DNA of 63,389 bases, filler included, from Octopus bimaculoides (Eukaryota): NCBI RefSeq assembly GCF_001194135.2. It is 6 parts of 6 records of this genome, joined end to end, with 100 filler letters (N's around TTAATTAATTAA, not from the genome) between each part and the next. Parts side by side here need not be neighbours in the genome. Positions count along the whole stretch, not along the records: positions 55,069 to 56,486 come from NW_026428189.1; 5 more parts are not named here. The stretch is one strand, 5' to 3'. This document shows positions 3,330 to 56,486 of this stretch, piece by piece (positions within the stretch are counted from its first letter, which is position 1; every line of letters starts with the position of its first letter). The notes below the pieces were generated by a model. That model was not told the DNA's origin and did no database searches. It saw only the letters and a list, made by a program, of their open reading frames with translations. Made by a program: the position numbers and the translations under genes.

Positions 3330-5040
3330 CATCGTCAGCACTCTTCGACCATGAAAGATTGTAAATTTCTGACTCACCAGACAGACGGGAGAAGATAATG
3401 ATCCTGTACATGGGTTTCATTCAATTTTTCCTCCCAGGCTCTTATCCACAGGGATTGTTTCTAGACTTGTGCAATCCGCATTTTCTTTGTGCCCCTGCTA
3501 TCCTGTTCTGTTCGTAGGAGGTGGCACCTCTTTTGGTGTACATTCGCCACAAACTGAAATCTTGCACTTGCTTTTCACGGGTATCCGGTGTGATGTGAAA
3601 GCTTTCAGGTGATGTCTTGAGAAAGTCTTTGAATTGCATTTTCTGTGCACATTGCGCGCGCTATCCTTTCGCCAGTTCACAGTGAAACAGTTTTGTGTGT
3701 GGTCGTGTCAGGCATTCGGACAAGGTGACCTGCCCATCTGACTTGCGCTCTCCTCAACAGGATTTAAATATTTATCAGATCCGCTCGAGATATGATCTGC
3801 GACACTTCGGCTCGCCAGGCGATTTACAACAGCTTTCTCAGGCAGTGGAATCGGTTCTACTTTTTGCATTAGCGTTCATAGAGAGTCCAACTCTCGAAGC
3901 CGTGCATTAGTGTAGGCAGTACAATTGATTGGTACACCTCTAAATTGTTAGCCATCCTAGTGCTTCTCTTCTCTCACATTGATTCATGTAGTCACACAAA
4001 TGCTTCAATTCTCTTGGGTGGGGGTGTCAACTTCATTCGTCAATGTTCACAGATCTGAAAATTGCTCTGCCGAGGTACGTGAACTTATTAATCACGTTGA
4101 GGATTTCTCCTCCGACAGTAATAGCTTGTTTCACATACGGCCTCTGAGGGGCAAGCTGGAATATGACCTCTTCCTTTCGAGTACTGATGTGTGGACGAAG
4201 TTATGTGAACGAAGGCAGTTAAAAACAAGTTCTTGCTTTGCTGCCTCTGATCGGCCGTGGCACTTTTGAGCCATCATCCAGCATGGTCTTGGCCTGTAGC
4301 CTCTGCAGGTTCTACAGTCTGCCATCGGTCTTGAGTCTGATTTTGGTTTCGTCGTCGTTGTTAAAGGCATCCGACACCATGGCTGAGAAAATCATACTCA
4401 ACAGCATAGGTGCGAATTCACGGCCCTGCTTGGCTCCGTTAGAAACTGGTAATTCATTGAGAGACTCTCCGCTGTCCAGCACTCGTGCGAGCATGCCGTC
4501 GTGAAGAATTTGTTTGAGTAGCCAATGCTGATGAATTTATTTGAGAAGACAATATTTCCACTGACGGTGTCAAAGGTCTTGGTTATGTCTACAAACGTCA
4601 CGTATAGGTAACATTTCTGTTTTTTTTTTTCACTGAAAAGAGTGGTCCCATCAAGCACTGAGCAATGATGATGCTCCAGAGAACTGTGTCTCGCAGGTTG
4701 CTTTTGCAGAATCGCAAGAGCGCCTAGAGTTGTTGTGAACGTAATTCTGTATCTCATCCACCTTGTTGCTGAGCCAGTAATCCTTCATCCTTCATCTCTC
4801 GGAGCCTTACCTGCACCTTACTTTTGGTGACGTCGTAAGCTGCTTTCTTGGAAGCCGATGTGCTATCTTGCTGAGACACTCTGTAGGTTTTCTGCTTCTC
4901 CTCGATCAGATTCTGACTTTCCTCCTCGTCGTCGTCGAATAAACACTTGGCGCCTACGTGTATTCTGGCCCAGAGGAGAGGGTGCATTGTTGTACATCAT
5001 GTGTCTGAACACCTCCTAGGCCTCTTGCTCCCTTCGTACC
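3330..5040 (-). mobile_element. 5'-truncated, frameshifted RTE-clade LINE (RT and C-terminal region)
   Basis: Fragments read FDDDEEESQNLIEEK...SKVQVRLREMKD, LYVTFVDITKTFDTVS, LARVLDSGESLNELPVSNGAKQGREFAPMLLSMIFSAM...KTDGRL and KRGATSYEQNRIAGAQRK. All are typical of RTE/BovB-like ORF2. Confidence 0.9.
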
Positions 5041-8159: not shown

Positions 8160-9485
8160 TCTTCTTCTTCTTCTTCTTCTTCTTCTTCTTCTTCTTCTTC
8201 TTCTTCTTCTTCTTCTTCTTCTTCTTCTTCTTCGAGCGGTTCCAAAGTGTTGTTTTGTGCAAGTGCTCCATCCATATTGCAGCCTCTATTTGTTCCATGT
8301 ACTTTTCAAGATTTTTACTCACTGTTCCCAGGGATCCGACAATTATTGGTACTACTACCACTTTTTTCAGCGACCACAACTTCTTAACCTCCCAAGCTAA
8401 CCTCTCATACCTGTCGACTTTTCTTTCTTCCTTATCGCACACCTTGTTGCCAGCTGGGCATGCTATATCTATGATCCAGCATCGTTTGTTTTCTTTCTGA
8501 ATTAACGCTGTGTCTCGTTTCCTATTCTCTATCTCATGGTCACACTGAATCATAAAATCTCATAGGATCTTTGCATTATCATTTGCGATGATGCCTTCAG
8601 GTTTATGTTCGTGCCGCTTTTTTGCTCTGTCAAGTCCATACTTGTTGCAAAGTCCTTGCTATATTGTCATGACGTCTTTGATATTCTTTCTGGGCTACCG
8701 GTGTACAATGATTGCTAATATGTCATACGGTTTCATCATTTTGTCCNNNNNNNNNNNNNNNNNNNNNNNNNNNNNNNNNNNNNNNNNNNNNNNNNNNNNN
8801 NNNNNNNNNNNNNNNNNNNNNNNNNNNNNNNNNNNNNNNNNNNNNNNNNNNNNNNNNNNNNNNNNNNNNNNNNNNNNNNNNNNNNNNNNNNNNNNNNNNN
8901 NNNNNNNNNNNNNNNNNNNNNNNNNNNNNNNNNNNNNNNNNNNNNNNNNNNNNNNNNNNNNNNNNNNNNNNNNNNNNNNNNCATGCATTGATTTCTTTAT
9001 CCTCCTATTTTCAGTTTCATTTATTCACAAGTGCTTGTACAGTACTTTATCCTTGCAGTTGTCCATCCTACACAAGCCCGACTTTCTTACTTCCAATAAT
9101 AGCGGTTCTGAGGCATATTTTATATACCACTCTATGTTGTTTTCTTCTGTTCTAATGCTGTATTCGCATCCAATCAGTCCTCTTCTTCCTCTTTTTCTTG
9201 GTACATACAGTCTGTATGTTTCACATTTTGCGTGGAGTATCCCATATCTAGTCAGCAACTTCTTTGTCTATATGTATAAGCTGTTTAGTTTGTCTACTGT
9301 CCATGCGATTACCCCTGTTCCATATCTGAGGAGTGGAGCAGCCTAGGTGTTGATAGCTTCCATCTTATTCCGTCCGTTTAATTTCGACTTAAGGATCAGT
9401 CTCAGTCTGCGCAAATACTCCACCTTAAATTTTTCTGTCATTTATTCTCCATTAATTTATGCATTTCCAGTATCCCCATGTAATT
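8160..9485 (-). mobile_element. R4/Dong-superfamily (RLE) LINE fragment of a second family, ending in a (GAA)n tract
   Basis: RT thumb region YGIL...RLYVPRKRGRRGLIG and RLE region CWIIDIACPAGNKVCDKEERKVDRYERLAWEVKKLWSLKKVVVVPIIVGSLG. (CTT)n at 8160-8235 on the plus strand is the 3' tail or target. Interrupted by N gaps. Confidence 0.88.
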
Positions 9486-11124
9486 NNNNNNNNNNNNNNN
9501 NNNNNNNNNNNNNNNNNNNNNNNNNNNNNNNNNNNNNNNNNNNNNNNNNNNNNNNNNNNNNNNNNNNNNNNNNNNNNNNNNNNNNNNNNNNNNNNNNNNN
9601 NNNNNNNNNNNNNNNNNNNNNNNNNNNNNNNNNNNNNNNNNNNNNNNNNNNNNNNNNNNNNNNNNNNNNNNNNNNNNNNNNNNNNNNNNNNNNNNNNNNN
9701 NNNNNNNNNNNNNNNNNNNNNNNNNNNNNNNNNNNNNNNNNNNNNNNNNNNNNNNNNNNNNNNNNNNNNNNNNNNNNNNNNNNNNNNNNNNNNNNNNNNN
9801 NNNNNNNNNNNNNNNNNNNNNNNNNNNNNNNNNNNNNNNNNNNNNNNNNNNNNNNNNNNNNNNNNNNNNNNNNNNNNNNNNNNNNNNNNNNNNNNNNNNN
9901 NNNNNNNNNNNNNNNNNNNNNNNNNNNNNNNNNNNNNNNNNNNNNNNNNNNNNNNNNNNNNNNNNNNNNNNNNNNNNNNNNNNNNNNNNNNNNNNNNNNN
10001 NNNNNNNNNNNNNNNNNNNNNNNNNNNNNNNNNNNNNNNNNNNNNNNNNNNNNNNNNNNNNNNNNNNNNNNNNNNNNNNNNNNNNNNNNNNNNNNNNNNN
10101 NNNNNNNNNNNNNNNNNNNNNNNNNNNNNNNNNNNNNNNNNNNNNNNNNNNNNNNNNNNNNNNNNNNNNNNNNNNNNNNNNNNNNNNNNTATATATCTGT
10201 CTGTCTGTCAGTCCGTCTCTTTCTACTCTGAAATGTAAGCGTAACTCAACGGTCCACTCTAGCAGCTTAATGTTGCCAAAATATATCAAAATTCAAATCG
10301 CTAAGCTCGGCTAATGACAAATCACGCCCTTTTGACGTGCAGTTCAGCAAATAGCGATTGAAACAAGAAGTACCAGATTGGAGTAATTCGTGAGGTCGAT
10401 ATTATTGACGAATACTTTCGAAAATAATCACACCGAATGAGTGAATCTTTATAAAACCTTTCTAAATTTGGATGCTATTTATCCGAAGAGTCTCCATCGT
10501 TTCTAACATGGCCGTTCATTTCGGAGCATACTTCTGTACACTAAGGCACGAATAAAGTAGTAGAATCTCACAGGGAACAATATCAATATATATAGAGAGA
10601 ACTCGATACCTTATATATTCTTCACAACATTGGTTCTTGTCTCTCAACCACACATCTCTTTATAAAGCAAGATTACAAACGTTCACACTCAATCTTATCC
10701 AATCTTCGTCTCGAAACCGACAATCTGCCAAGTTCTCTTTTACTCTCGAAACAGTTATCTCTCTCCAATGACGTCACTTAAACATGTGTAACTACTATAG
10801 CACTGCTAATTCCTCTCACTCTTCAATTTCCCCACGATGTTCTGCACTAGAAATCAAATTAAATCTACTCACACCATGAAAGACATCGGCCAAATCATTG
10901 CACTCTCTTCCATCATATACACCAGATACATCTGATGCTTCTGTGGTTTATTTCAATCTGCGGTTGGTATGCTCTACTGGTGATTACATGAATTAGTAGT
11001 CAGTTTTACGATTTCACCTTCCTATACATATGTAGCATGTAAAATTACCGGAAGCGGTATTCTGAGCACTCTATTCTTAGCACTTTGTTTTTCTCATTTA
11101 TTTTATATTTTGCCTTTTAACTTT

Positions 11125-13290: not shown

Positions 13291-14238
13291 TGAATGTATG
13301 CATGTATGTATGTATGTATGTATGTATGCATGTATGTGTGTATGTATGTATGCATATATGTATGTATGTATGTAACATGTCATATTAGGTCTGCAATTCT
13401 GCGATGCTCATGCTGTGGTGAGGAAGTCTAATGATCTACTCAGACTGTTATATACTCCGTGTTGTCACAATACTGTCAAAACTCGATTAACTCTTACTTT
13501 GTTACCCACTCCTCTGTTCAATTTTGAATCATTTTAAATTGGCTGAAGTTACAGCCTTATCTACATTTTTTTTTCTTGTCAGAATTTATCGTACGTCTAA
13601 TACCTATCTATGCCTGTCATTTTAATTAATAATATCTTGGTACGCCGTACTATTTTTGGTAGCTCATGCATTCTCCGATATTTATTCCGATTTGAATAAT
13701 TTCGACTAAATATCGAACTTTCAGCATTGCTTTTCAGTTAATTATTTCTAACGACACATATTTTCCTTAATTCACCACAGAATACTTCAGCATCCCCAAA
13801 ATTTTAAAAACTATGCAGTATTTTAAAATTTTAATTAATATATTGACATTGTTGATTATGTCTTTTTCTTTTTAGTATTTCAAGTTAAGAGAAAGCATTC
13901 GAACATTTAATACTGACGTCTAATTTATTAAATAATGTATATTTAAAACATCCCCACATGTAATAAGTGCTGCTGAATCAATAGTGTAGATTGCATGAAA
14001 TTACCGCGATATTGTAAACAGTCACCATTCATTTAGCAGCATGTGTATTGATTCCCAGCCAACTTATCATATTCATTTACATCTTAAGAATTGTATGAAC
14101 GTAGTATGTTCGACTGAAAGCTAATGCAAAATATATGCAAATAGCTAACAAAATTTCTATCAAATTATAACATAAACAAACAATTCCAATGTTAAGAATG
14201 ATAATAGAGATTCTCTTGAGCATATATCTACCTATCTA

Positions 14239-14294
<56 letters not shown>

Positions 14295-16924
14295 ACGCAG
14301 ATCATTCAAACCATTATAATTTAGCCAAATGGACACGATATATCTTGTGTTCTTTCGGTTTAAATTGTTACAAATAATATTTTATGGAAATATCAAATTT
14401 AATTAAAATGGAAGCCGTAGTAGAAATATGATACATTACGTTCGTGTGTTTCCTACAAAATGTAATTTAGAATAAGTGAGACTATTTCAATCGCTAAGAC
14501 AAACTGAAATATAAATTTTACACCGTAGGCTTCTTTTTGTTAACCGATATCATTACCGAGGTGAATTGCTACAATAATATAATGCATGTAAGTAGGAACA
14601 CAATGAAATGCATGCAAATGAGGATTACATACAACGTATATAAATATATAAAAACGATAAAATAAATATATGTCAATATGTATATAAAGATGACACATCT
14701 TGAGTCATTCCAAAACGCACTAGTAGCCTGCTCGTTCATACTATATCCTCGTTTGTTTTTCCTGTCCACTGGGAAAAATACGAAATATTGCAAAATTTCC
14801 AACGTCCAGTCACTGTAGATATAAGGCATCATAGCAAGTTAGATTCTAAGCATTTTACAAAGATTCTAACGTATGACAGATAATAGGTGCATTAGCGTGC
14901 GAGACAAGTTCGATAATCTTCTCTTCTCCTTTAACGACTTTTGATATAACGAGTTTAACATCGAATACTATAGATTAAAGTTTAGTGTATATAAAGTAGT
15001 CGAAAATATAGAGTAAGAATTTTGTAGATTATGTGTCAGTGGTTTATATAACATGTTTAGAACTGTTCTATGTATCTATCAAAACTAAATAATGTCTATC
15101 CATATACTTATAGATGAGCGTCATAGGATCGAGTGAATATACTAATCTAGGAATTAAGAGTAATGTAAAATTCGCAAGCGCTTCGATAACATGCAATTGT
15201 CAGATAAATAAAATCGTTGGCGTATCTTGGAAAGAAAGCCCACTCTGCTACGTACAGATGTCTTAGGTAGACATCATAATGATAACTAATTTTCTACAAT
15301 TCAATAGGTTAAAGTCATTAAAATCCAATTCTGACGTAGGATGTACAGTTTGTATTTTTCGACATAAGATTGTAATCAGGTAATTCTATTTTATAGATAA
15401 GTATGAAACTAGGCATCCATTTTTAATCATAAGTAACCATTACAATACCGTTAAAGTGGCATTAAGCTTTTATCGTCATGGTTAATGCTAAATGCATAAG
15501 AAAAATTATTTTTGTTTCTTTTTGCCAAAGCAAACTTTTACAAGAGTAAAGATGCAACTAAAAATTGAACCCGAGGAACAGTCTACGTAAGCCAAGTGAC
15601 ATTGTTGTTGCTTAGATCCCGATCAAAGTTGTGATGAAATTAGGATCAAAATATTTTCAGCGATAACAATCACCATCTTGTTTTAAGACATATACGAGTA
15701 TGTTATGAAAATGATGGAAGTTTGACTGCTGCTTATAGTAGTAATAACGATTGCATACGCATTATAGTTGCCATGCTTCATTTTCCAGTACTTAAACAAT
15801 CGGCACATATTCTTATTTTACAACCTGATGGGTTACTGGGAAAATGCGCAATATGAAAAACCAAAAGTCATTCATTTTGATGTTGTTATTACATAAACTT
15901 CCAGTTTAATAACCAGCCACCCGAAAATATTAACGGTTAATATATATTGTTGCATATTAGAATACGAATCAATGGATGTTGGAATTTTAAAAATATAATA
16001 GACGCTGTGTTTCAAATCTGGAGTCCTTCTCGTTTATTATCATAAATACTAAATATATTGAAACATCAGGAATGGAACGGTTTATGTTTCTGCTGAATTG
16101 ATGATTATTTATGAAGATATTAAGATATTAATTTCATTTCATTTCACTCTATATTTATTACTATGCTTACTATAGTTGTAGAATTTGTGGTAGTGGATTA
16201 TCAAAATCGTCAGCGATCGAGCAAAATGTTTGTGGTACGTAAAATCTCACATTTTACGTTCTGTGTTCACCTTGCACTGAGATTAAAGTTGCCTCTCATC
16301 CACCCGGCTTATATAAAAGAAATTATTGGTTGAATGTGCGGATCGATTTAAGCGAATGCCACTCTACTCCAAAGGTTGATACAGTGTATTATATAACGAA
16401 AAACTCTATTAGTACTTTTGATTATTTATATTTACAAATATGCTTAAATTACTTTCTTTCGTTGTTTAGCCTTTTTATAAATGTTCATACATACGAATAA
16501 TTCACAATAGCAGCAGTGGCATCAGAAAACGTCATATATATGTATGCATCCTGGAGATAAATTAAGTCTTTCAAAAAGACATCTTTAATGGCACATCCTA
16601 AGCCACGTGGTGTTAAACCGGGTTACGGATTAGTGCTACCATCTATGTATGTAACATTTAAACGAACACGTTTACGTCGAATTATTAAGGCGTGTACAAT
16701 GTTGAATACGATATATTAAATAAATATGGTTAGGTACAAAGATATACATAGATGCACACACATGCGCGCACATAATTACATGCAGGTATTTCTTAATGAA
16801 TGTCAATTACATAATAGACTTTAAATCATCCATCACACATATATAAACTACACATATAGATACATACATATATACATACATGAAAAATACACACTCATAT
16901 ATTAATATACATACACATATAAAC

Positions 16925-16974
<50 letters not shown>

Positions 16975-17189
16975 TTTTTCGTAAATTCTCACTATATATC
17001 TATATATATATATAATTGCACTGTAACATTACTAACAGACTATTCTTTAAAATCTTTCCTACTAGATTAAAATATCAACTCTGCTACAAATATATCCACA
17101 GACAATAGCGTTGGAGAACACAAGTATTAACGTTGTAGTTGAGAAAAAGTTACCAGACCTATGGACTGGAAGCCATCCGAGTATTAGAA

Positions 17190-17760
17190 AATATTTTCCT
17201 GCATCATTATTATTCGCACCGGCTGCCAAATCGCTCACATCCTCACTGCTGCCCAATTTTCTGTAAACGATGTAAAGGTAGGAAGATGTGGAAGGGACAT
17301 CATGAAAACAATTTTTCTCAAAACTAATATTGCCATCGCGTGTGTTTCTAGCGAGTGTGACGATATGCCAGCCCACGTCTTTGAATAGGGACTTAGACTC
17401 AATTTAGACGGTTAAGTGAAGCTGTTAGAGAATGTAGTCGAAACTTGTCTGGAGAGGGTTGCTGCTCGAAGTTTACATGAGTGGCAGCAGAATCTGTTAC
17501 AGCACCATACCTTCTAAAAGGGATGGACGTTTTTGTTGGAGAATTTTTACGACTTCACCAGCTCCAATTTCTGATATCCCAATTCTCTTGATTGTAATTC
17601 CATGGATTACTATGTGTGTGGAGTGGTGAAGAATACGACCAAGATGAAAGAGGTGTTCAATAACTTTCTATGAGCACGCACATTGAGGAACATATATCCC
17701 AGGCTCCTGGTGTGTCTTGAGGCCTTGGTGGAAGCTGCGGGCAGCTACCTAGATTAAACA
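17190..17760 (+). mobile_element. Degenerate, internally deleted Tc1/mariner-superfamily transposon (maT/DD37D-like)
   Basis: Remnants read VSSECDDMPAHVFE.GLRLNLDG..KLLENVVET..ERVAA...WQQ, FYDFTS..YPNSLDCNSMDYYVCGVV and LEALVEAAGSYLD. They match SPDCNPMDY-type catalytic motifs. Confidence 0.75.
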
Positions 17761-18902
17761 CTTATCTCCCAGTCATGATCCAGTTAAAGTTTGTTGATTT
17801 GTTTTAAATACTTTAAGAAATGGGTAATTGTGCTTTACGTCCCTTTTATGCAAAATGTCAAATTTAGCCCAAACACCCAGTATGCATATATACGTACATG
17901 CATACATGAACAATTATAACTGTCTGTATTTTTCTGAATGTGTGTGTATGTATATGTATATGTGAACACATATGTATATGTATATGTGAACACATATGTA
18001 TATGTATTTGTGCCTATGTATACATGTGTGTGTGCATGTGCGTGCGTGTAAACTAATGTAAACATATATCTCAAATAAATCAAATAAATATCCCGCATAT
18101 GAGATGGAAAAAAACAACTCGTTTGCCACAATTCATCTTGTGATTATTGACACATAGATAATATTCACAAAATACCAGAACTGATTGCCGGCAAAGATGT
18201 AAACAGTTTGGTCAGAAATATTATGAAAAATAAAATAAAGTTTAACAGTTCTACTTAAGTTTCAACTTCGTGACTTGAATAAGATTTTCCTTCAAATTAT
18301 ATTTCGTCCAAGAGTAGTTCTTTTCAATTACGAGTTAACGAATTAACCTTTCATACACTTGAATCGGAAGACAATCTATTTTATTCATGATCTTCTGTTA
18401 AATCCATCTTTTCACAATGTAGCATTTCCAGCAAAAGATAATTTACGAAAAGTCAAATAAGTCTTGAAAAGTAATTATTATTCTTGTAGTTCCTTCCTAA
18501 ATGTGATCAATAATTTCAATATTTTCAGCTTGCGAAAGTTAGTTCTAAGTTCACTTGTTGGCATCATAGAGCAGCTGACATTAACGATGCAGTGTTACAT
18601 TTATAATGCATATACCTTATGGAATTTTTAAATAATATTGCTCTCATTAATTTTGTTCGTCTTTTCTAATTCCTAAAATATATCTACACGCATACACACA
18701 ACCTCACACATACACGTACTCACACACATACACACGCACACGCACTCACGCACTCACATATATGTTTGTATACATATGCGTTATATACATACATATATAT
18801 ATGCTTACCTATCTGTATATAGCTACACACACACAAATATATATACAGGGAAACACAAATATGTACACGTACACACATATATAGGTATGTATGCATGTAT
18901 TC

Positions 18903-26808: not shown

Positions 26809-27439
26809 CATATGCACATACATCCGCATGCGTACGCATATGCATGCCCAGGCTGGGTGTTCGTGTGTTCATTTATATGTATATTTGTGTCTCCATCGAT
26901 TCTCCAAAATATAATGAATATCAGAAGTAACTGTACACTATTCTTTAAAGCATTATAATGAGGGGTACTAAATCACCAGTGCCGCACGATTCATATTTAT
27001 AACTTAACATCTGGTAGCCTGAACATGTTTTGTATTAAATTATGTGAATTTTTCTTTACTTTAATATTTTAACAATATTCTTTTTTTCGTTCCAGCCATG
27101 ATGCTGCGGTCATACTGGAGCACCACAGTGAAGTATACTGTACCTAACATCAACGACCTCGAGATTAAGAGTTACAGGCTATATATATTTCAAGAGCAAT
27201 GCGTCTGTTTTAGTCTCATTTATTCTACTTCTATTCTGACTCCGTTGAGAATATTTCAACGATTTTTCTTTTCTTTACTTATTGCAATCGTTATTTAAAC
27301 CTCTAACAAATAGAGATTAAAGCAAAAACTCATCTTATAAAATTTCCCAGTTAGTAAAACGGATGCCGTCTACTTAGGTACTGATATTTTTATTCCTATG
27401 CTATATGCTATCAGCGTTATCTTACTTCAGCAACCAGAA

Positions 27440-27720
27440 CATGTTAGCGCTCAATTATTTACCAAGCATCCCTCATAAAATCAAGCTCATTGGAAGATAA
27501 CGACGCTACTAGCTTACTGTCGTTGTCAACTAACCTTCTCATGCTGGGTGGTTGATTTGATTTCCAGTTTGAGCACATTGATTTATCATTCTGCTTGTTG
27601 TATGGCCTGTAACTATTATTATCCATTCTCAGGGTTATGTTTAGAAAACAAGTGCCACTAATGGTAGTGCTCGCAGTATTACTAGGTCCGATTTTTAAAA
27701 ATCTATTCATCAAATTTTAA
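27440..27720 (-). mobile_element. Penelope-like retroelement ORF fragment (RT C-terminal region)
   Basis: FLNITLRMDNNSYRPYNKQNDKSMCSNWKSNQPPSMRRL...SLSSNE matches the PLE pattern FLDVTL...YKPY.KPN......SNHPP......LSSN. Confidence 0.75.
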
Positions 27721-28955
27721 AAAATATACATATAATTCCTGATCGTTTCAATTTCTCGAAAGACACCAGCTAGTGATTAGTTGTAATTTCTTTTCCAATA
27801 AATCTACAATATAAATAGTGTGAATGAAATTATATTGCCAAAGCACTCTAATTTCACTCACATTAGCAATATTCCAGACTATCGTATGTCAGATCCGTCA
27901 TCCCCGCTTTTCCGAACTCGTATTTTGTTATCGGCAAGCAAAACTCGTATTCCACATTCTCGCTCTGAAAACCATATTAATGTCTGACTTCCCAATATCA
28001 AATAATTTTTCGTAATTTCCATCTTTGTATCAATCTGCGTGAGAGTACTTATGTCTGAGTGTGTATGTGTGAGTGTGCGTATGTGTGTATGTTCACTGAA
28101 ACGGTTATATAAAACATTTAATTGACAGTTGAGTTGAGTTCTTCACAACTGTGTGAAAGACTCAACATGAAAGATGTCAAGAACTCAACTCAAATGTCAG
28201 GCAATACATTTTCAAATCTGATGATTACTACAAACGTATGAAAGTGGTTATTGAACTTTATTAACATTACTAAATATTTTTTCATGTTTTAACAAACTTC
28301 AAGATTGTAAAAAACTTTTTTTTAAATTCAATAATAGAAAAACGTGAAAACCGGACCATGTTGTAACTTTATTCANNNNNNNNNNNNNNNNNNNNNNNNN
28401 NNNNNNNNNNNNNNNNNNNNNNNNNNNNNNNNNNNNNNNNNNNNNNNNNNNNNNNNNNNNNNNNNNNNNNNNNNNNNNNNNNNNNNNNNNNNNNNNNNNN
28501 NNNNNNNNNNNNNNNNNNNNNNNNNNNNNNNNNNNNNNNNNNNNNNNNNNNNNNNNNNNNNNNNNNNNNNNNNNNNNNNNNNNNNNNNNNNNNNNNNNNN
28601 NNNNNNNNNNNNNNNNNNNNNNNNNNNNNNNNNNNNNNNNNNNNNNNNNNNNNNNNNNNNNNNNNNNNNNNNNNNNNNNNNNNNNNNNNNNNNNNNNNNN
28701 NNNNNNNNNNNNNNNNNNNNNNNNNNNNNNNNNNNNNNNNNNNNNNNNNNNNNNNNNNNNNNNNNNNNNNNNNNNNNNNNNNNNNNNNNNNNNNNNNNNN
28801 NNNNNNNNNNNNNNNNNNNNNNNNNNNNNNNNNNNNNNNNNNNNNNNNNNNNNNNNNNNNNNNNNNNNNNNNNNNNNNNNNNNNNNNNNNNNNNNNNNNN
28901 NNNNNNNNNNNNNNNNNNNNNNNNNNNNNNNNNNNNNNNNNNNNNNNNNNNNNNN

Positions 28956-31920: not shown

Positions 31921-32650
31921 AAGAGAACGAAAGGCAGTTGGTGACAAACGCATATTACAATGCAACGCTGTACCCCAAAGAGGAATAGACTAATGCAGTA
32001 AATATGCAATAAAATGGTCCATCCTCACGACACGTACCATACAAGCCCGATAGGCAACTGAAGAACATAACTCGCACCACACACACAAAACACTGGTACA
32101 AGAACAGACTCAGACCCAACACCACAACAGAACACGCTGACGCAATACAGTACGCTCCGAACGACGCCATCACGGTGACATCCTCAAACACTAGCACCAA
32201 CTCACTTGTATTCCAGCTGAAAGGACGTCTCCATCAACAGCTGTGACACGGGAGCCAGTGCGACGGGAAACATTTGTGTACGTGCGCACGTGTATGTGTG
32301 AGTGTGTGCTTGTGTGTGTGCGTGCGTGCGCGTGCTTGCGTGTGCGTGCCCATGCGTGCATTTATAATCTTGTTTTTCTGATGTTCCTTCGCAGATTTTA
32401 GTGTTGTTGCTGTGGTTGTTGATGTTGCTGCTGTGTAAGTAGCAAAGGACTTTTCTCCGAATAATATAAATAATAATGATAATAATAAAAGTTCATTTGT
32501 TTTACCCCTTTGGCTTCGCACAGTCCTTTTAAATATACAATTAAGTTGTTCTGTGCATTGACTATTCTTTCTGCTATTCCAAGTAGCTTAGTAGGAATCA
32601 ATTTCACAACTATCCAGGTATTTGTTACTCTAAAGGTGTTACCTGGTGAA

Positions 32651-32654
<4 letters not shown>

Positions 32655-32706
<52 letters not shown>

Positions 32707-32765
32707 TGAGAGAGAGAAAGAGAGAAAAGGAGAGAGGGAGAGGGAGAGAGAGAGAAAGAGAGAGA
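32655..32765. repeat. (GA)n microsatellite
   Basis: Directly visible. Confidence 0.95.
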
Positions 32766-33164
32766 ACGTTTGGCTTTAAGGATTTTCTTTTGGAAAGCGT
32801 TTTCCACATGAACTATTAGGTTTGGTTATTCCTTTTGGCCAAAGTTCATCTTCGTATCAATTGTGGATGATGTTAAATCAAAGCTGGTTAGCAGCAGAGA
32901 TATTTCTGAAATATATCTTGTTAACATAAACATCGACAACTTGTGAACATAGATGTTAACCTCTTCTCAACATGGATAGGTGCCGATATATTGTCAACAC
33001 AGTTATCGGCATGTTAACATTTTATTGACATTTTGCCAACATATATATTGAATCTTGCTAAACTATATATTGACGTCTTGTCAACATATATTGACGTCTT
33101 GCCAACATAAATATTAGCATCTGGTCAACATATACATTGACTGATATTTTGTGAATACAGAAAT

Positions 33165-33350
33165 TGGCTTCAAATTTTCGTACAAGGCCATTAATTTCGA
33201 AGGAGGGAGTAAGTTGATTGCATCGACCCCAGTATTGAACTGGTACTTATTTTATTGATTCGGAATTTGAACTGAGAGCGCAAAGACGGATGAAACGCAG
33301 CCAAGCATTTCGTCCGGCGTTTTAACGATTCTACCAGCTCACCGTCTTAT
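33165..33350 (-). mobile_element. SINE family B, internally deleted
   Basis: tcgaccccagtattgaactggtacttattttattg...gaatttgaactgagagcg...gcatttcgtccggcg...tctaccagctcaccg is the reverse complement of family B. Confidence 0.75.
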
Positions 33351-33374
33351 TGTCAACGTAATATTAACATCTTG

Positions 33375-33515
33375 TAAATTCCGCCGAGGTGGACTTTGCC
33401 TTTCATCCTTTCGGGGTCGATAAATTAAGTACCAGTTGCGTACTGGGGTCGATGTAATCGACTGGCCTCCCGCCCTAAAAATGTCGGGCCTTGTGCCCAG
33501 AGTAGAAAAAAATAA
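33375..33515 (+). mobile_element. SINE family B, 5'-truncated
   Basis: aaattccgccgaggtggactttgcctttcatcctttcggggtcgataaattaagtaccag...gggccttgtgcccagagtagaaaaa. Confidence 0.85.
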
Positions 33516-33776
33516 TAATAACTCGTGAACACAGATATTGGACATCCTGTCGACATTGATTTTGACATCTTGTCAACATAAATGTTAGCATCCTGTCGAC
33601 ATTGATTTTGACATCTTGTCAACATAAATGTTAGCAGCTTGTCGACACACATGTTGACATCTTGTCAACAAAGAAACTCTGAGTTACAGTGTTGTTTTTT
33701 GTTGATGTACTTCCCAACATTCTGGGGTTTTGACAACAAAATAAGCTTAACAAAGATATATACATTCACTTAAGCA

Positions 33777-55068: not shown

Positions 55069-55318
55069 CTACTACTACTCGATATTATTAAATGTTATTG
55101 CTGGTGATGTTGAAAATGCTTTATTAAGTAAAGTGAAAGTTGTGTTGTGTCATTAAGAAGTGGGTGTAGTCGTCAGCTGACTTTTCATATAAAAACAACG
55201 ATAATTTATATTTCTACTCCACATTACAAAACTAACAAGCNNNNNNNNNNNNNNNNNNNNNNNNNNNNNNNNNNNNNNNNNNAAAAAGTAAGTTAGATAT
55301 ATTCCTAACAATTTTATA

Positions 55319-56486
55319 ATGCCTAACGCAAACGATACAAGTTCGGATCAGGTTTTTCAGGACGCTATTCATGGATCTATGGAGTTGCCACCACTCTGTG
55401 TNNNNNNNNNNNNNNNNNNNNNNNNNNNNNNNNNNNNNNNNNNNNNNNNNNNNNNNNNNNNNNNNNNNNNNNNNNNNNNNNNNNNNNNNNNNNNNNNNNN
55501 NNNNNNNNNNNNNNNNNNNNNNNNNNNNNNNNNATGTCATCTAGCTGGGAAAATGATTCGCCATCTTAAGCAGCAAGATTCCAATTTGGGTATAACTGAT
55601 AGAGATATACTATGTGTTGAAATTGCTGGTTTGTGCCACGNNNNNNNNNNNNNNNNNNNNNNNNNNNNNNNNNNNNNNNNNNNNNNNNNNNNNNNNNNNN
55701 NNNNNNNNNNNNNNNNNNNNNNNNNNNNNNNNNNNNNNNNNNNNNNNNNNNNNNNNNNNNNNNNNNNNNNNNNNNNNNNNNNNNNNNNTGAAATTGATTT
55801 CATAAAAGATATTATTATTGGTGAACAAAGGAAGTCTAAGAAGTCAAATTTCTTTTACCAAATTGTCAGCAATAATTTCTATAACATTGACGTTGACAAA
55901 TGGGATTATCTGGCGAGAGATTCCCATTTTCTTGGCATTGGAACATCCTTTGATCACGAAAGAATGCTGAAAATGTCCAAAGTAATAGATGGCACGCTAT
56001 GCTACAGAGACAAAACGCTTAAANNNNNNNNNNAAATTTCTATGATATGTTTTATTCACGATATCGACTACATAACACGGCTTACCAGCACAAAACTGTT
56101 CTCCTGCTTAATAAACTACTTGGCGATGCTTTCAATTCCGCAGATAAACACCTCGCAATTTTCGAGAGGGTGGACGATATGAAGAAATTTACTTATTTTA
56201 CTGATAGTATTTTGGAGGAGATGTTAAAGTGTGAGGGGAGTGAATGTCTCGAAGACGCCCAGAAAAAACTGAAGGCTATAATCGGTCGGTCTTTTGCATA
56301 CAAAGGCACCGTCACAGACACAATCGAGGGCACAATCACGGGCACATTCGAAGACAGTGATACGAGGAGAAATACAAGGAAGAGGAGAATCGATGCCAAA
56401 TTTCGGGCCGATTGTAGAGAACAGGGCACATTCAGGGAAGCAATCAAGGATAAGAAACTGAAGCAGATCAAGTGCACAATCGTTGG
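55319..56486 (+). CDS. SAMHD1: SAMHD1-like HD-domain dNTP triphosphohydrolase, no SAM domain, apparently intronless, 3'-incomplete
   Basis: VFQDAIHGSMELPPL (SAMHD1 VINDPIHGHIELHPL), CHLAG, CVEIAGLCH(D), IVSN..YNIDVDKWDYLARDSHFLG..FDHERM, CYRDK..NFYDMFYSRYRLHNTAYQHK, DAFNSAD, DDMKKFTYFTDSI. Frame is preserved across the 132-N and 148-N gaps. The 10-N gap at 56024 is a placeholder at an apparent overlap (RDKTLK|NFYDMF). Confidence 0.93.

What the first reader, a model, noticed from the sequence alone, without database searches (positions are those of the whole stretch)
55319..56486. Intronless, SAM-less SAMHD1-like dNTPase on its own 1.4-kb block
Seen: an in-frame TAA (55289-55291) lies 30 nt upstream of the ATG and the HD domain begins about 10 residues later, leaving no room for a SAM domain unless an upstream exon splices in. 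The N gaps (132 and 148 nt) are about the size of the missing protein segments and keep frame, so no introns are evident over about 1.1 kb. Established: vertebrate SAMHD1 is multi-exon, depletes dNTPs and restricts retroviruses and LINE-1. Inference: a retrocopy, a member of a lineage-specific expanded restriction-factor family in a retroelement-laden genome, or a gene from a virus, parasite or contaminant.
Basis: partly seen in the sequence, partly recalled or inferred. Interest (0 to 1): 0.7.

Follow-up and report, generated by a model that had tools for sequence, protein, structure and literature searches.

The report
Octopus intronless SAMHD1-like gene copy
This small scaffold holds most of one copy of an octopus-specific family of intron-free, SAM-domain-free SAMHD1-like dNTP-hydrolase genes; the family sits in tandem arrays on octopus chromosomes and evolves fast, as antiviral genes do, and the copy is a host gene, not a virus or contaminant.

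Summary
An ORF starts at ATG 55319, with an in-frame TAA 30 nt upstream. It matches the human SAMHD1 catalytic core from about residue 113, with no room for a SAM domain, and stays open to the piece's edge. The 132-N and 148-N gaps keep frame. The 10-N gap shifts frame by one base, but the continuous O. vulgaris sequence shows nothing is missing there.

The piece is collinear, non-coding upstream flank included, at 84-90% identity with three tandem copies (about 7.3 kb apart) on an Octopus vulgaris chromosome. Every octopod homologue inspected (O. vulgaris, O. sinensis, O. bimaculoides, Argonauta) has a single-exon CDS and no SAM domain. A bivalve and a coral homologue have at least 9 and 12 exons.

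The octopod genes form one clade, grouped with animal rather than giant-virus homologues. The piece belongs to a subfamily with a repeat-encoded insertion. It keeps every visible catalytic and allosteric-site-2 residue. Recent paralogues of that subfamily show dN/dS well above 1.

Verdict: a new member of a known kind, from an annotated but apparently undescribed octopod SAMHD1-like expansion. That it sits on its own block reflects assembly fragmentation. A retrocopy founder is inferred, not shown.

The parts
55069..55240 (+). Non-coding upstream flank of the gene. It begins with the tail of a (TAC)n microsatellite.
   Evidence: It aligns at 82-97% identity to the stretch upstream of each of the three O. 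vulgaris tandem copies. There it is preceded by a (TAC)22-59 array.
55241..55282 (.). Assembly gap of 42 N in the 5' flank, not listed in the finding.
   Evidence: The equivalent distance in O. vulgaris L001 is the same, 46 nt between alignment ends in both.
55283..55318 (+). 5' leader carrying the in-frame TAA (55289-55291).
   Evidence: The leader sequence is conserved upstream of the ATG in O. vulgaris and O. bimaculoides copies.
55319..55401 (+). CDS block A: the start codon and 27 codons, opening the SAMHD1 catalytic core (human ~113-132).
   Evidence: phmmer alignment to human SAMHD1. It is 89-91% nt identical to the O. vulgaris L001 copies.
55402..55533 (.). Gap 1 (132 N). It hides allosteric-site-1 residues and the first metal-binding His (human ~133-170).
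   Evidence: Frame is kept. O. vulgaris has 114 nt of uninterrupted coding sequence here.
55534..55640 (+). CDS block B, ending in the His of the HD motif (human H206). The next codon starts with G.
   Evidence: A G-initial codon fits Asp and does not fit the Asn of the D207N subfamily.
55641..55788 (.). Gap 2 (148 N). It hides the Asp of the HD motif and about 50 residues after it.
   Evidence: Frame is kept. O. vulgaris copies have 156-162 nt of continuous coding sequence here.
55789..56023 (+). CDS block C (78 codons), with D309, D311, K312, Y315, D319, D330, R333, R352 and K354 in human numbering.
56024..56033 (.). A 10-N placeholder gap that shifts the window frame by one base. No residue is missing.
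   Evidence: O. vulgaris is continuous and in frame across this site. The human alignment ends at chain position 279 in block C and resumes at 282 in block D, and the last two codons of block C are the two residues in between.
56034..56319 (+). CDS block D, first part (95 codons read from 56035). It carries N358, R366, H370, Y374, Q375, H376 and K377 and runs to about human residue 461.
   Evidence: It is 70% identical to P0053 residues 234-347.
56320..56486 (+). Start of the subfamily's repeat-encoded, low-complexity insertion. The ORF is still open at the piece's edge.
   Evidence: 12/24-nt tandem repeats at 56305-56351. The homologous repeats in O. vulgaris have periods of 12/24/60 nt. The intact relatives P0053 (555 aa) and P0054 (532 aa) read through the insertion into a C-terminal SAMHD1 module. 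Only this frame is free of stops.

Best explanation
The piece is the first ~390 codons of one member of an octopod-specific family of SAMHD1-like HD-domain genes.

Family traits. Members have a single-exon CDS and no SAM domain. They end at about human residue 557-560, so they lack the vertebrate C-terminal regulatory tail. They lie in head-to-tail and inverted tandem arrays on octopus chromosomes.

Subfamily and species. The piece belongs to the subfamily that carries a minisatellite-encoded insertion in the loop equivalent to human ~461-500. By divergence it most likely comes from O. bimaculoides or an equally distant octopus.

Why it stands alone. The assembly broke at a (TAC)n microsatellite on the left and at the coding minisatellite on the right, in a multi-copy region.

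Inferred history. One 5'-truncated retrocopy of a multi-exon SAM+HD gene arose before the Octopus/Argonauta split, then amplified by DNA-level tandem duplication.

Inferred function. The product is a dNTP triphosphohydrolase that lowers dNTP pools. The recent paralogues diversify under positive selection, as expected for a factor in conflict with viruses or retroelements. I put the chance that this copy is catalytically active at about 0.6, and the chance that the family's role is defence at about 0.5.
For: Shown:
- Human SAMHD1 matches at E = 7e-27 and 4e-9.
- The best protein hits are octopus SAMHD1-like proteins at 68-79% identity.
- The piece is collinear with three O. vulgaris tandem copies at 84-90% identity, upstream non-coding DNA included, and those copies have no intron at the piece's gaps.
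- Single-exon CDS were found in L001 (3 copies), L002, L003 (4), L005 (3), L007, L089, and Argonauta L004 and L006.
- Mya has at least 9 exons over 12 kb and Porites at least 12 over 25 kb. Mytilus and chiton proteins carry SAM+HD.
- All octopod sequences form one clade at 99% bootstrap.
- Animals plus octopods are separated from giant-virus homologues at 96%.
- The slowly evolving Argonauta copy scores 409-431 bits against animals and 235-239 bits against giant viruses.
- Every visible catalytic and allosteric-site-2 residue is retained in the piece, and the full H/HD/D tetrad is present in its nearest relatives.
- dN/dS of the piece against the L001 copies is 0.41-0.52. Its dS of 0.23-0.26 equals the O. 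bimaculoides/O. vulgaris orthologue dS of 0.21-0.24.
- Within the subfamily, codon differences run 20-67 nonsynonymous against 1-5 synonymous. The coding sequence diverges faster (3-3.5%) than its flanks (0.5-1.9%).
- The AlphaFold model of P0053 matches SAMHD1 structures at TM 0.73-0.81.
- SAMHD1 proteins are detected in O. vulgaris skin mucus (PMC11431876).
Against: - Two of the four metal ligands (H167, D207) and allosteric site 1 lie in the gaps and are unseen in this copy.
- The C-terminal part is beyond the piece's edge, so intactness is unknown. In the O. vulgaris array the C-terminal module is out of frame with the main ORF in two of the three copies and absent from the third.
- The octopod-wide changes K116Q, N119Q and D137N mean that regulation may differ from human SAMHD1.
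- No retrocopy hallmark (poly(A), target-site duplication) was found, and no multi-exon parent was identified in cephalopods.
- With giant-virus outgroups the fast-evolving family sits at the base of the animal clade, which is probably long-branch attraction.
- Block C is marginally closer to another subfamily, so gene conversion or a chimeric scaffold is not excluded.
- The source species is inferred from divergence only.
Confidence: 0.85

Rival explanations
1. This copy is itself a fresh processed retrocopy or pseudogene of a multi-exon SAMHD1 gene, inserted on its own by a LINE.
For: It has no introns over ~1.1 kb and no SAM domain. Other animals' homologues are multi-exon.
Against: - Its non-coding upstream flank is shared with three tandem copies spaced ~7.3 kb apart in O. 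vulgaris, so it spread by DNA duplication.
- All relatives in four octopod species are equally intronless and form one clade.
- The visible ORF is intact and dN/dS is below 1 against orthologue-level relatives.
- No poly(A) or target-site duplication was seen in relatives.
Confidence: 0.04
2. The gene comes from a virus (for example a giant virus), a parasite or a contaminant, or it entered octopods by horizontal transfer from a giant virus.
For: Giant-virus metagenome bins carry intronless, SAM-less SAMHD1-like genes at 28-46% identity to P0053. In the tree with viral outgroups the fast octopod family branches at the base of the animal clade.
Against: - The O. vulgaris copies lie on 78-100 Mb chromosomes. 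In O. sinensis the array lies on a 77.5 Mb chromosome next to Vps39, and a further copy on a 70 kb contig.
- No close relative was found in IMG/VR.
- Animals plus octopods group at 96% bootstrap to the exclusion of the viral sequences.
- The Argonauta slow copy scores 409-431 bits against animals and 235-239 bits against viruses.
- Without viral outgroups, octopod monophyly including that slow copy stands at 99%.
Confidence: 0.04
3. The scaffold is a dead or chimeric fragment. Either short contigs from different paralogues were stitched together by read pairs, or it is a decaying copy with no function.
For: - The contigs are only 107-453 nt long, in a family with many 80-97% identical copies.
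- Block C is slightly closer to another subfamily.
- In the O. vulgaris array, two of the three copies have the C-terminal module out of frame and the third lacks it.
Against: - Blocks A, B and D are each closest to the same subfamily. Block C carries that subfamily's diagnostic residues next to its 3' end.
- There are no stops in about 290 visible codons.
- All visible functional residues are kept.
- Intact full-length members of the subfamily exist (P0053, P0054).
Confidence: 0.1

Closest known systems
Human/vertebrate SAMHD1 (SAM + HD dNTP triphosphohydrolase; PDB 7ujn, 6tx0, 4bzc and others)
   Same: - The catalytic-core fold is shared: the P0053 model matches at TM 0.73-0.77.
- The octopod proteins are 40-44% identical to animal SAMHD1 homologues over the HD core.
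- The H167/H206/D207/D311 tetrad is present in the piece's nearest relatives.
- Substrate-pocket and allosteric-site-2 residues are conserved in the piece.
   Different: - No SAM domain.
- Single-exon CDS.
- K116Q, N119Q and D137N in or near allosteric site 1.
- About 38 residues shorter around human 461-500 in the short subfamilies, or a ~150-residue repeat insertion there in the piece's subfamily.
- Ends at about human 557-560, so it lacks the C-terminal regulatory tail.
- Many tandem paralogues instead of one gene.
SAM-less 'SAMHD1-like' proteins of other animals and fungi (teleost SAMHD1-like paralogues; Mya arenaria P0100; Rhizophagus irregularis SAMHD1, PDB 9mr6)
   Same: They are HD-core-only proteins of 440-550 aa. 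9mr6 is the best PDB match, by sequence for the O. vulgaris copy of the piece's subfamily and by fold for the O. sinensis P0053 model.
   Different: The bivalve and coral genes inspected are multi-exon. They keep K116, N119 and D137. They do not group with the octopod clade.
Annotated octopus proteins: O. sinensis P0053 (555 aa), O. vulgaris P0054/P0005/P0006, O. bimaculoides P0003/P0007
   Same: They belong to the same family. P0053, P0054 and the L001 copies are the same subfamily: 70-80% amino-acid identity, the same repeat insertion and the same upstream flank.
   Different: The piece is a different gene or species copy (dS about 0.23-0.26). No database protein is identical to it, and its own product was not in the protein collection.
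Tandemly expanded, positively selected restriction-factor families (for example primate APOBEC3, rodent/cattle TRIM5; comparison from general knowledge)
   Same: The evolutionary mode is the same: local tandem arrays, dN/dS above 1 between young paralogues, and changes clustered in surface patches away from the catalytic motifs.
   Different: The protein fold and chemistry are unrelated. No pathogen partner is known for octopus.
Giant-virus HD-domain SAMHD1-like genes (IMG/VR GVMAG loci L010-L088)
   Same: They are intronless, SAM-less, 364-545 aa, and 28-46% identical.
   Different: They form separate branches in the tree. The octopod genes group with animals at 96% and lie in host chromosomes.

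Membership tests
SAMHD1 family (HD-domain dNTP triphosphohydrolase) | Significant sequence and fold similarity over the catalytic core | tested here: met
   For the piece, E = 7e-27 and 4e-9 against human SAMHD1. For the nearest relatives, E = 1e-74 to 1e-80. The P0053 model matches SAMHD1 structures at TM 0.73-0.81.
SAMHD1 family (HD-domain dNTP triphosphohydrolase) | Metal-binding tetrad H167 / H206-D207 / D311 | tested here: inconclusive
   H206 and D311 are visible and conserved. H167 and D207 lie in the N gaps; the D207 codon starts with G, which is compatible with Asp. The nearest relatives (L001a-c, P0053, P0054) have all four.
SAMHD1 family (HD-domain dNTP triphosphohydrolase) | Substrate-pocket residues (K312, Y315, D319, R366, H370, Y374, Q375) | tested here: met
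   All are present in blocks C and D of the piece.
SAMHD1 family (HD-domain dNTP triphosphohydrolase) | Allosteric site 2 (D330, R333, R352, K354, N358, H376, K377; N119) | tested here: met
   Seven of the eight are conserved in the piece; N119 is Q. The roles of these residues are taken from general knowledge of the human structures.
SAMHD1 family (HD-domain dNTP triphosphohydrolase) | Allosteric site 1, guanine-nucleotide specific (K116, D137, Q142, R145) | tested here: inconclusive
   K116 is Q in the piece. D137, Q142 and R145 are hidden in gap 1. All Octopus and Argonauta relatives have N at 137, while Q142 and R145 are mostly kept. All non-octopod animals checked have K116 and D137.
SAMHD1 family (HD-domain dNTP triphosphohydrolase) | N-terminal SAM domain (the canonical vertebrate and mollusc architecture) | tested here: not met
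   An in-frame TAA lies 30 nt upstream of the ATG, and core homology starts at residue 8-11. No octopod relative has a Pfam SAM hit, whereas Mytilus and chiton proteins do. So the piece is a member of the HD-core family but not of the SAM+HD architecture.
SAMHD1 family (HD-domain dNTP triphosphohydrolase) | dNTP triphosphohydrolase activity and tetramer formation | not testable with these tools
   These are inferred from conserved residues only.
Processed retrocopy (for the founder of the octopod clade) | Simultaneous absence of all parental introns | tested here: met
   The CDS is single-exon in 16 octopod copies, against at least 9 and 12 exons in Mya and Porites.
Processed retrocopy (for the founder of the octopod clade) | Poly(A) remnant and target-site duplications; an identifiable multi-exon parent gene | tested here: not met
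   Downstream of five copies there are only short A runs and A-rich 3' regions. No target-site duplication was looked for. No cephalopod SAM+HD or multi-exon parent appeared among the listed hits, but the lists were cut at 120 of thousands.
Viral (giant-virus) HD dNTPase | Phylogenetic placement within viral sequences, or a viral genomic context | tested here: not met
   for the placement. The context is host-chromosomal.

The most novel reading that the evidence does not exclude
Octopods replaced or supplemented the canonical SAM+HD SAMHD1 with the descendants of a single 5'-truncated retrocopy. These grew into a tandem arsenal with three kinds of member:
(i) a diversifying subfamily, the piece's own, with dN/dS well above 1 and a repeat-encoded, possibly beta-structured insertion;
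(ii) a conserved subfamily that has lost the metal-binding Asp residues (D207N, D311N, H215Y) yet stays under purifying selection, which suggests a non-catalytic sensor, decoy or regulator;
(iii) a slowly evolving housekeeping-like copy.
This would be an invertebrate restriction-factor arms race built on dNTP depletion.
Probability: 0.35. Interest if true: 0.65.

Novelty: new member of a known kind. Interest (0 to 1): 0.42.

Why it matters
The gene itself is ordinary: one more copy of a family that genome pipelines already label 'SAMHD1-like' in octopuses.

What the follow-up exposes is a family-level pattern that the searchable literature does not describe:
- an octopod-wide intronless, SAM-less clade;
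- tandem arrays;
- strong excess of amino-acid change between young paralogues;
- a conserved subfamily lacking catalytic Asp residues.

If confirmed, it gives a tractable example of restriction-factor-style evolution of a nucleotide-depleting enzyme outside vertebrates, in animals whose antiviral immunity is poorly known. It also warns that short unplaced scaffolds with N gaps in octopus assemblies can be fragments of multi-copy immune-type genes rather than contaminants.

Tried and rejected
- Pfam on the gapped translations gave no HD hit, because the motif-bearing stretches are N. The PDB sequence search was used instead.
- I tested whether the N gaps mark the stretches most conserved among paralogues (repeat-induced contig breaks). 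This is not supported: gap 1 scores 0.91 and gap 2 0.84 mean pairwise identity, against 0.83-0.92 for the readable blocks.
- A scan of viral contigs with one protein found no relative. The profile scan found only distant giant-virus homologues.
- Rfam found nothing on either strand.
- Minus-strand ORFs are short and overlap the coding repeat. They are treated as spurious.
- Retrocopy hallmarks downstream of five copies: none convincing.
- Inter-copy ORFs of 90-200 aa have no Pfam family. One 347-aa ORF in O. sinensis has a sub-threshold integrase hit.
- Literature searches for SAMHD1 with octopus, cephalopod, mollusc expansion, invertebrate paralogues, or tandem duplication found no description of this family.
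- The exact source species could not be determined. No eukaryotic DNA collection was searchable by sequence.

Full report
**1. The observation**

The piece (55069-56486) has five readable blocks separated by four N runs of 42, 132, 148 and 10 bases. An ATG at 55319 opens a frame that is preceded by an in-frame TAA at 55289-55291. The frame is the same on both sides of the 132-N and 148-N gaps.

After the 10-N gap the homologous frame is displaced by one base. The translated blocks match the human SAMHD1 catalytic core with E = 7e-27 (blocks A-C) and 4e-9 (block D). The match starts at ORF residue 8-11, equal to human residue 113-116, so there is no room for a SAM domain. The alignment reaches chain position 279 in block C and resumes at position 282 in block D. 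The last two codons of block C account for the two residues between, so nothing is missing at the 10-N gap. The frame is still open at the right edge of the piece.

**2. What the gaps hide**

The piece aligns at 84-90% nucleotide identity with three tandem copies, about 7.3 kb apart, on O. vulgaris chromosome OX597824.1 (locus L001). The match covers the coding blocks and the non-coding upstream flank, up to a (TAC)n microsatellite at the piece's left edge.

In those gap-free copies the stretches that correspond to the gaps are uninterrupted coding sequence:
- 114 nt at gap 1 (132 N);
- 156-162 nt at gap 2 (150 nt between alignment ends in the piece);
- 46 nt in both at the upstream gap.

Across the 10-N gap O. 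vulgaris reads straight through in frame, with a run of five A where the piece has three A on each side of the Ns. That gap is a placeholder between contig ends that probably overlap. So the relatives show no intron at any gap. For the piece itself this remains an inference from gap size and collinearity.

**3. The family**

The best protein hits are octopus 'SAMHD1-like' proteins of 254-555 aa from O. sinensis, O. vulgaris and O. bimaculoides, followed by Argonauta. None is identical to the piece.

Every octopod copy whose locus I read has a single-exon coding sequence:
- three in L001;
- one on a 1.6-kb O. bimaculoides scaffold (L002);
- four full copies and a fragment within 30 kb in O. sinensis next to Vps39 (L003);
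- three in a second O. vulgaris stretch about 270 kb from the first (L005);
- one on another O. vulgaris chromosome (L007);
- one in O. sinensis (L089);
- two in Argonauta (L004, L006).

By contrast, the homologue of the bivalve Mya has at least 9 coding exons over 12 kb. That of the coral Porites has at least 12 over 25 kb. Mytilus and chiton proteins carry SAM plus HD domains.

In a neighbour-joining tree all octopod sequences form one clade (99% bootstrap) and the genus Octopus forms a clade (100%) with several subfamilies. Three of them contain both O. bimaculoides (or the piece) and O. vulgaris/O. sinensis members.

**4. The piece's subfamily**

Blocks A, B and D are closest to the L001/L089/L007 group. 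That group carries a minisatellite (12/24/60-nt units, all multiples of three) inserted where human SAMHD1 has residues ~461-500. The piece enters this repeat at about 56305-56320 and the scaffold ends inside it.

Two members read through the insertion into the C-terminal SAMHD1 module: P0053 (555 aa) and P0054 (532 aa). In the O. vulgaris array the C-terminal module is out of frame with the main ORF in two of the three copies and absent from the third.

The synonymous distance of the piece to the L001 copies is 0.23-0.26. That equals the distance between O. bimaculoides and O. vulgaris/sinensis orthologues of another subfamily, 0.21-0.24. So the piece fits O. bimaculoides or an equally distant species.

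**5. Function-bearing residues**

Human numbering was checked against the printed alignment to chain 6tx0. On that numbering the piece keeps every residue that can be seen:
- H206, D309, D311, K312, Y315 and D319;
- D330, R333, R352, K354 and N358;
- R366, H370, Y374, Q375, H376 and K377.

H167 and D207 are hidden in the gaps. The D207 codon begins with G, which fits Asp. The nearest relatives have the complete tetrad.

All Octopus and Argonauta sequences differ from the other animals checked at K116 and at D137 (Asn), and all but one of them also at N119, so allosteric site 1 may work differently. The roles of these residues come from general knowledge of the human enzyme.

An AlphaFold model of P0053 has a confident HD core and a disordered first half of the insertion. 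The 20-residue repeats are predicted as long strands with moderate confidence. The model matches Rhizophagus and human SAMHD1 structures at TM 0.73-0.81.

**6. Selection**

The piece against the L001 copies gives dN/dS of 0.41-0.52. That indicates constraint, but weaker than in the other subfamily (0.27-0.29).

Among young paralogues of the piece's subfamily the pattern is extreme:
- 20-26 nonsynonymous against 1-2 synonymous codon differences between the three tandem copies;
- 55-67 against 3-5 between those copies (or L089) and L007, with dN 0.12-0.13 and dS 0.03-0.04.

Binomial P values go down to 1.5e-4 with a synonymous-site fraction of 0.20. The pairs are not independent.

The coding sequence differs more (3-3.5%) than the flanks of the same duplication units (0.5-1.9%). 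The changes cluster after codon 112, while the first 112 codons are almost invariant within the array. Gene conversion from the known diverged paralogues would import many synonymous differences and does not explain this pattern.

This is the signature expected of a conflict-driven gene. It is evidence about the family, not a demonstration of antiviral function.

**7. Rivals**

- A fresh retrocopy is unlikely, because the flanks are shared with tandem DNA duplicates and no poly(A) remnant is seen.
- A viral, parasite or contaminant origin is rejected by the chromosomal context. It is also rejected by similarity: the slowly evolving Argonauta copy scores 409-431 bits against animal SAMHD1 and 235-239 bits against giant-virus homologues. 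Animals plus octopods group at 96% bootstrap excluding the viral sequences. In that tree the fast family sits at the base of the animal clade, which I read as long-branch attraction, so a small doubt remains.
- A chimeric or decaying fragment cannot be excluded. The contigs are short and block C is marginally closer to another subfamily.

**8. Known or new**

The proteins of this family are annotated in public genomes. SAMHD1 proteins were detected in O. vulgaris skin mucus (PMC11431876). I found no paper that describes the octopod expansion, its intronless and SAM-less state, or its selection pattern.

The piece is therefore a new member of a known kind, and its isolation on a 1.4-kb block is an assembly effect. 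The retrocopy founder and the defence role are inferences.

Noticed in passing
L001:2521-3498, 9785-10753, 17155-18129; L007:10001-10978; L089:10001-11665: Young paralogues of the piece's subfamily differ almost only by amino-acid changes: 20-67 nonsynonymous against 1-5 synonymous codon differences, with dN/dS about 3.6 and above. Their non-coding flanks are more alike than their coding sequence.
   Followed up: partly
L002:229-1437; L003:10001-11221, 26882-28102, 32445-33665; L005:9941-11182, 15431-16672: One subfamily has D207N and H215Y, and mostly D311N, so it has lost metal-binding Asp residues. It keeps intact ORFs in three species, with dN/dS of 0.2-0.5. It may be a non-catalytic SAMHD1-like protein.
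   Followed up: partly
L010-L088 (IMG/VR giant-virus bins): 79 giant-virus loci encode SAM-less SAMHD1-like HD proteins of 364-545 aa, 28-46% identical to the octopus protein P0053. They branch outside the animal-plus-octopod clade.
   Followed up: partly
L001:10746-11196, 3500-3999, 18122-18571; window 56305-56351: A coding minisatellite (units of 12, 24 and 60 nt) forms a ~150-residue insertion in the subfamily. AlphaFold predicts its 20-residue repeats as long beta strands (pLDDT 63-84) and its first half as disordered.
   Followed up: partly
L003:10001-39553: The O. sinensis gene model 'SAMHD1 homolog isoform X1' (P0001) spans 29.5 kb across four tandem copies, and no single copy translates to it. 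It looks like a chimeric model.
   Followed up: partly
L001:9785-10000 and 2521-2736: The O. vulgaris models P0005 and P0006 start at an internal Met. The open frames continue 72 codons upstream and include the first metal-binding His.
   Followed up: yes
L003:5503-6546: A 347-aa ORF lies between Vps39 and the SAMHD1-like array in O. sinensis. It has a sub-threshold integrase-core (rve) hit at E = 1.4e-4, which suggests a mobile-element remnant.
   Followed up: no
window 55789-56023: Block C is marginally closer in nucleotides to the D207N subfamily copies (about 88%) than to the piece's own subfamily (85-86%), yet it carries the latter's diagnostic residues at its 3' end. Gene conversion or a scaffold mosaic could explain this.
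   Followed up: partly
L001:7030-7482, 14227-14736, 1981-2158, 9356-9422, 16633-16790: Long ACC/ACT and TAC microsatellites (up to ~450 nt) lie between the tandem copies. The piece's left edge falls in the TAC array, which probably explains why the assembly broke there.
   Followed up: partly
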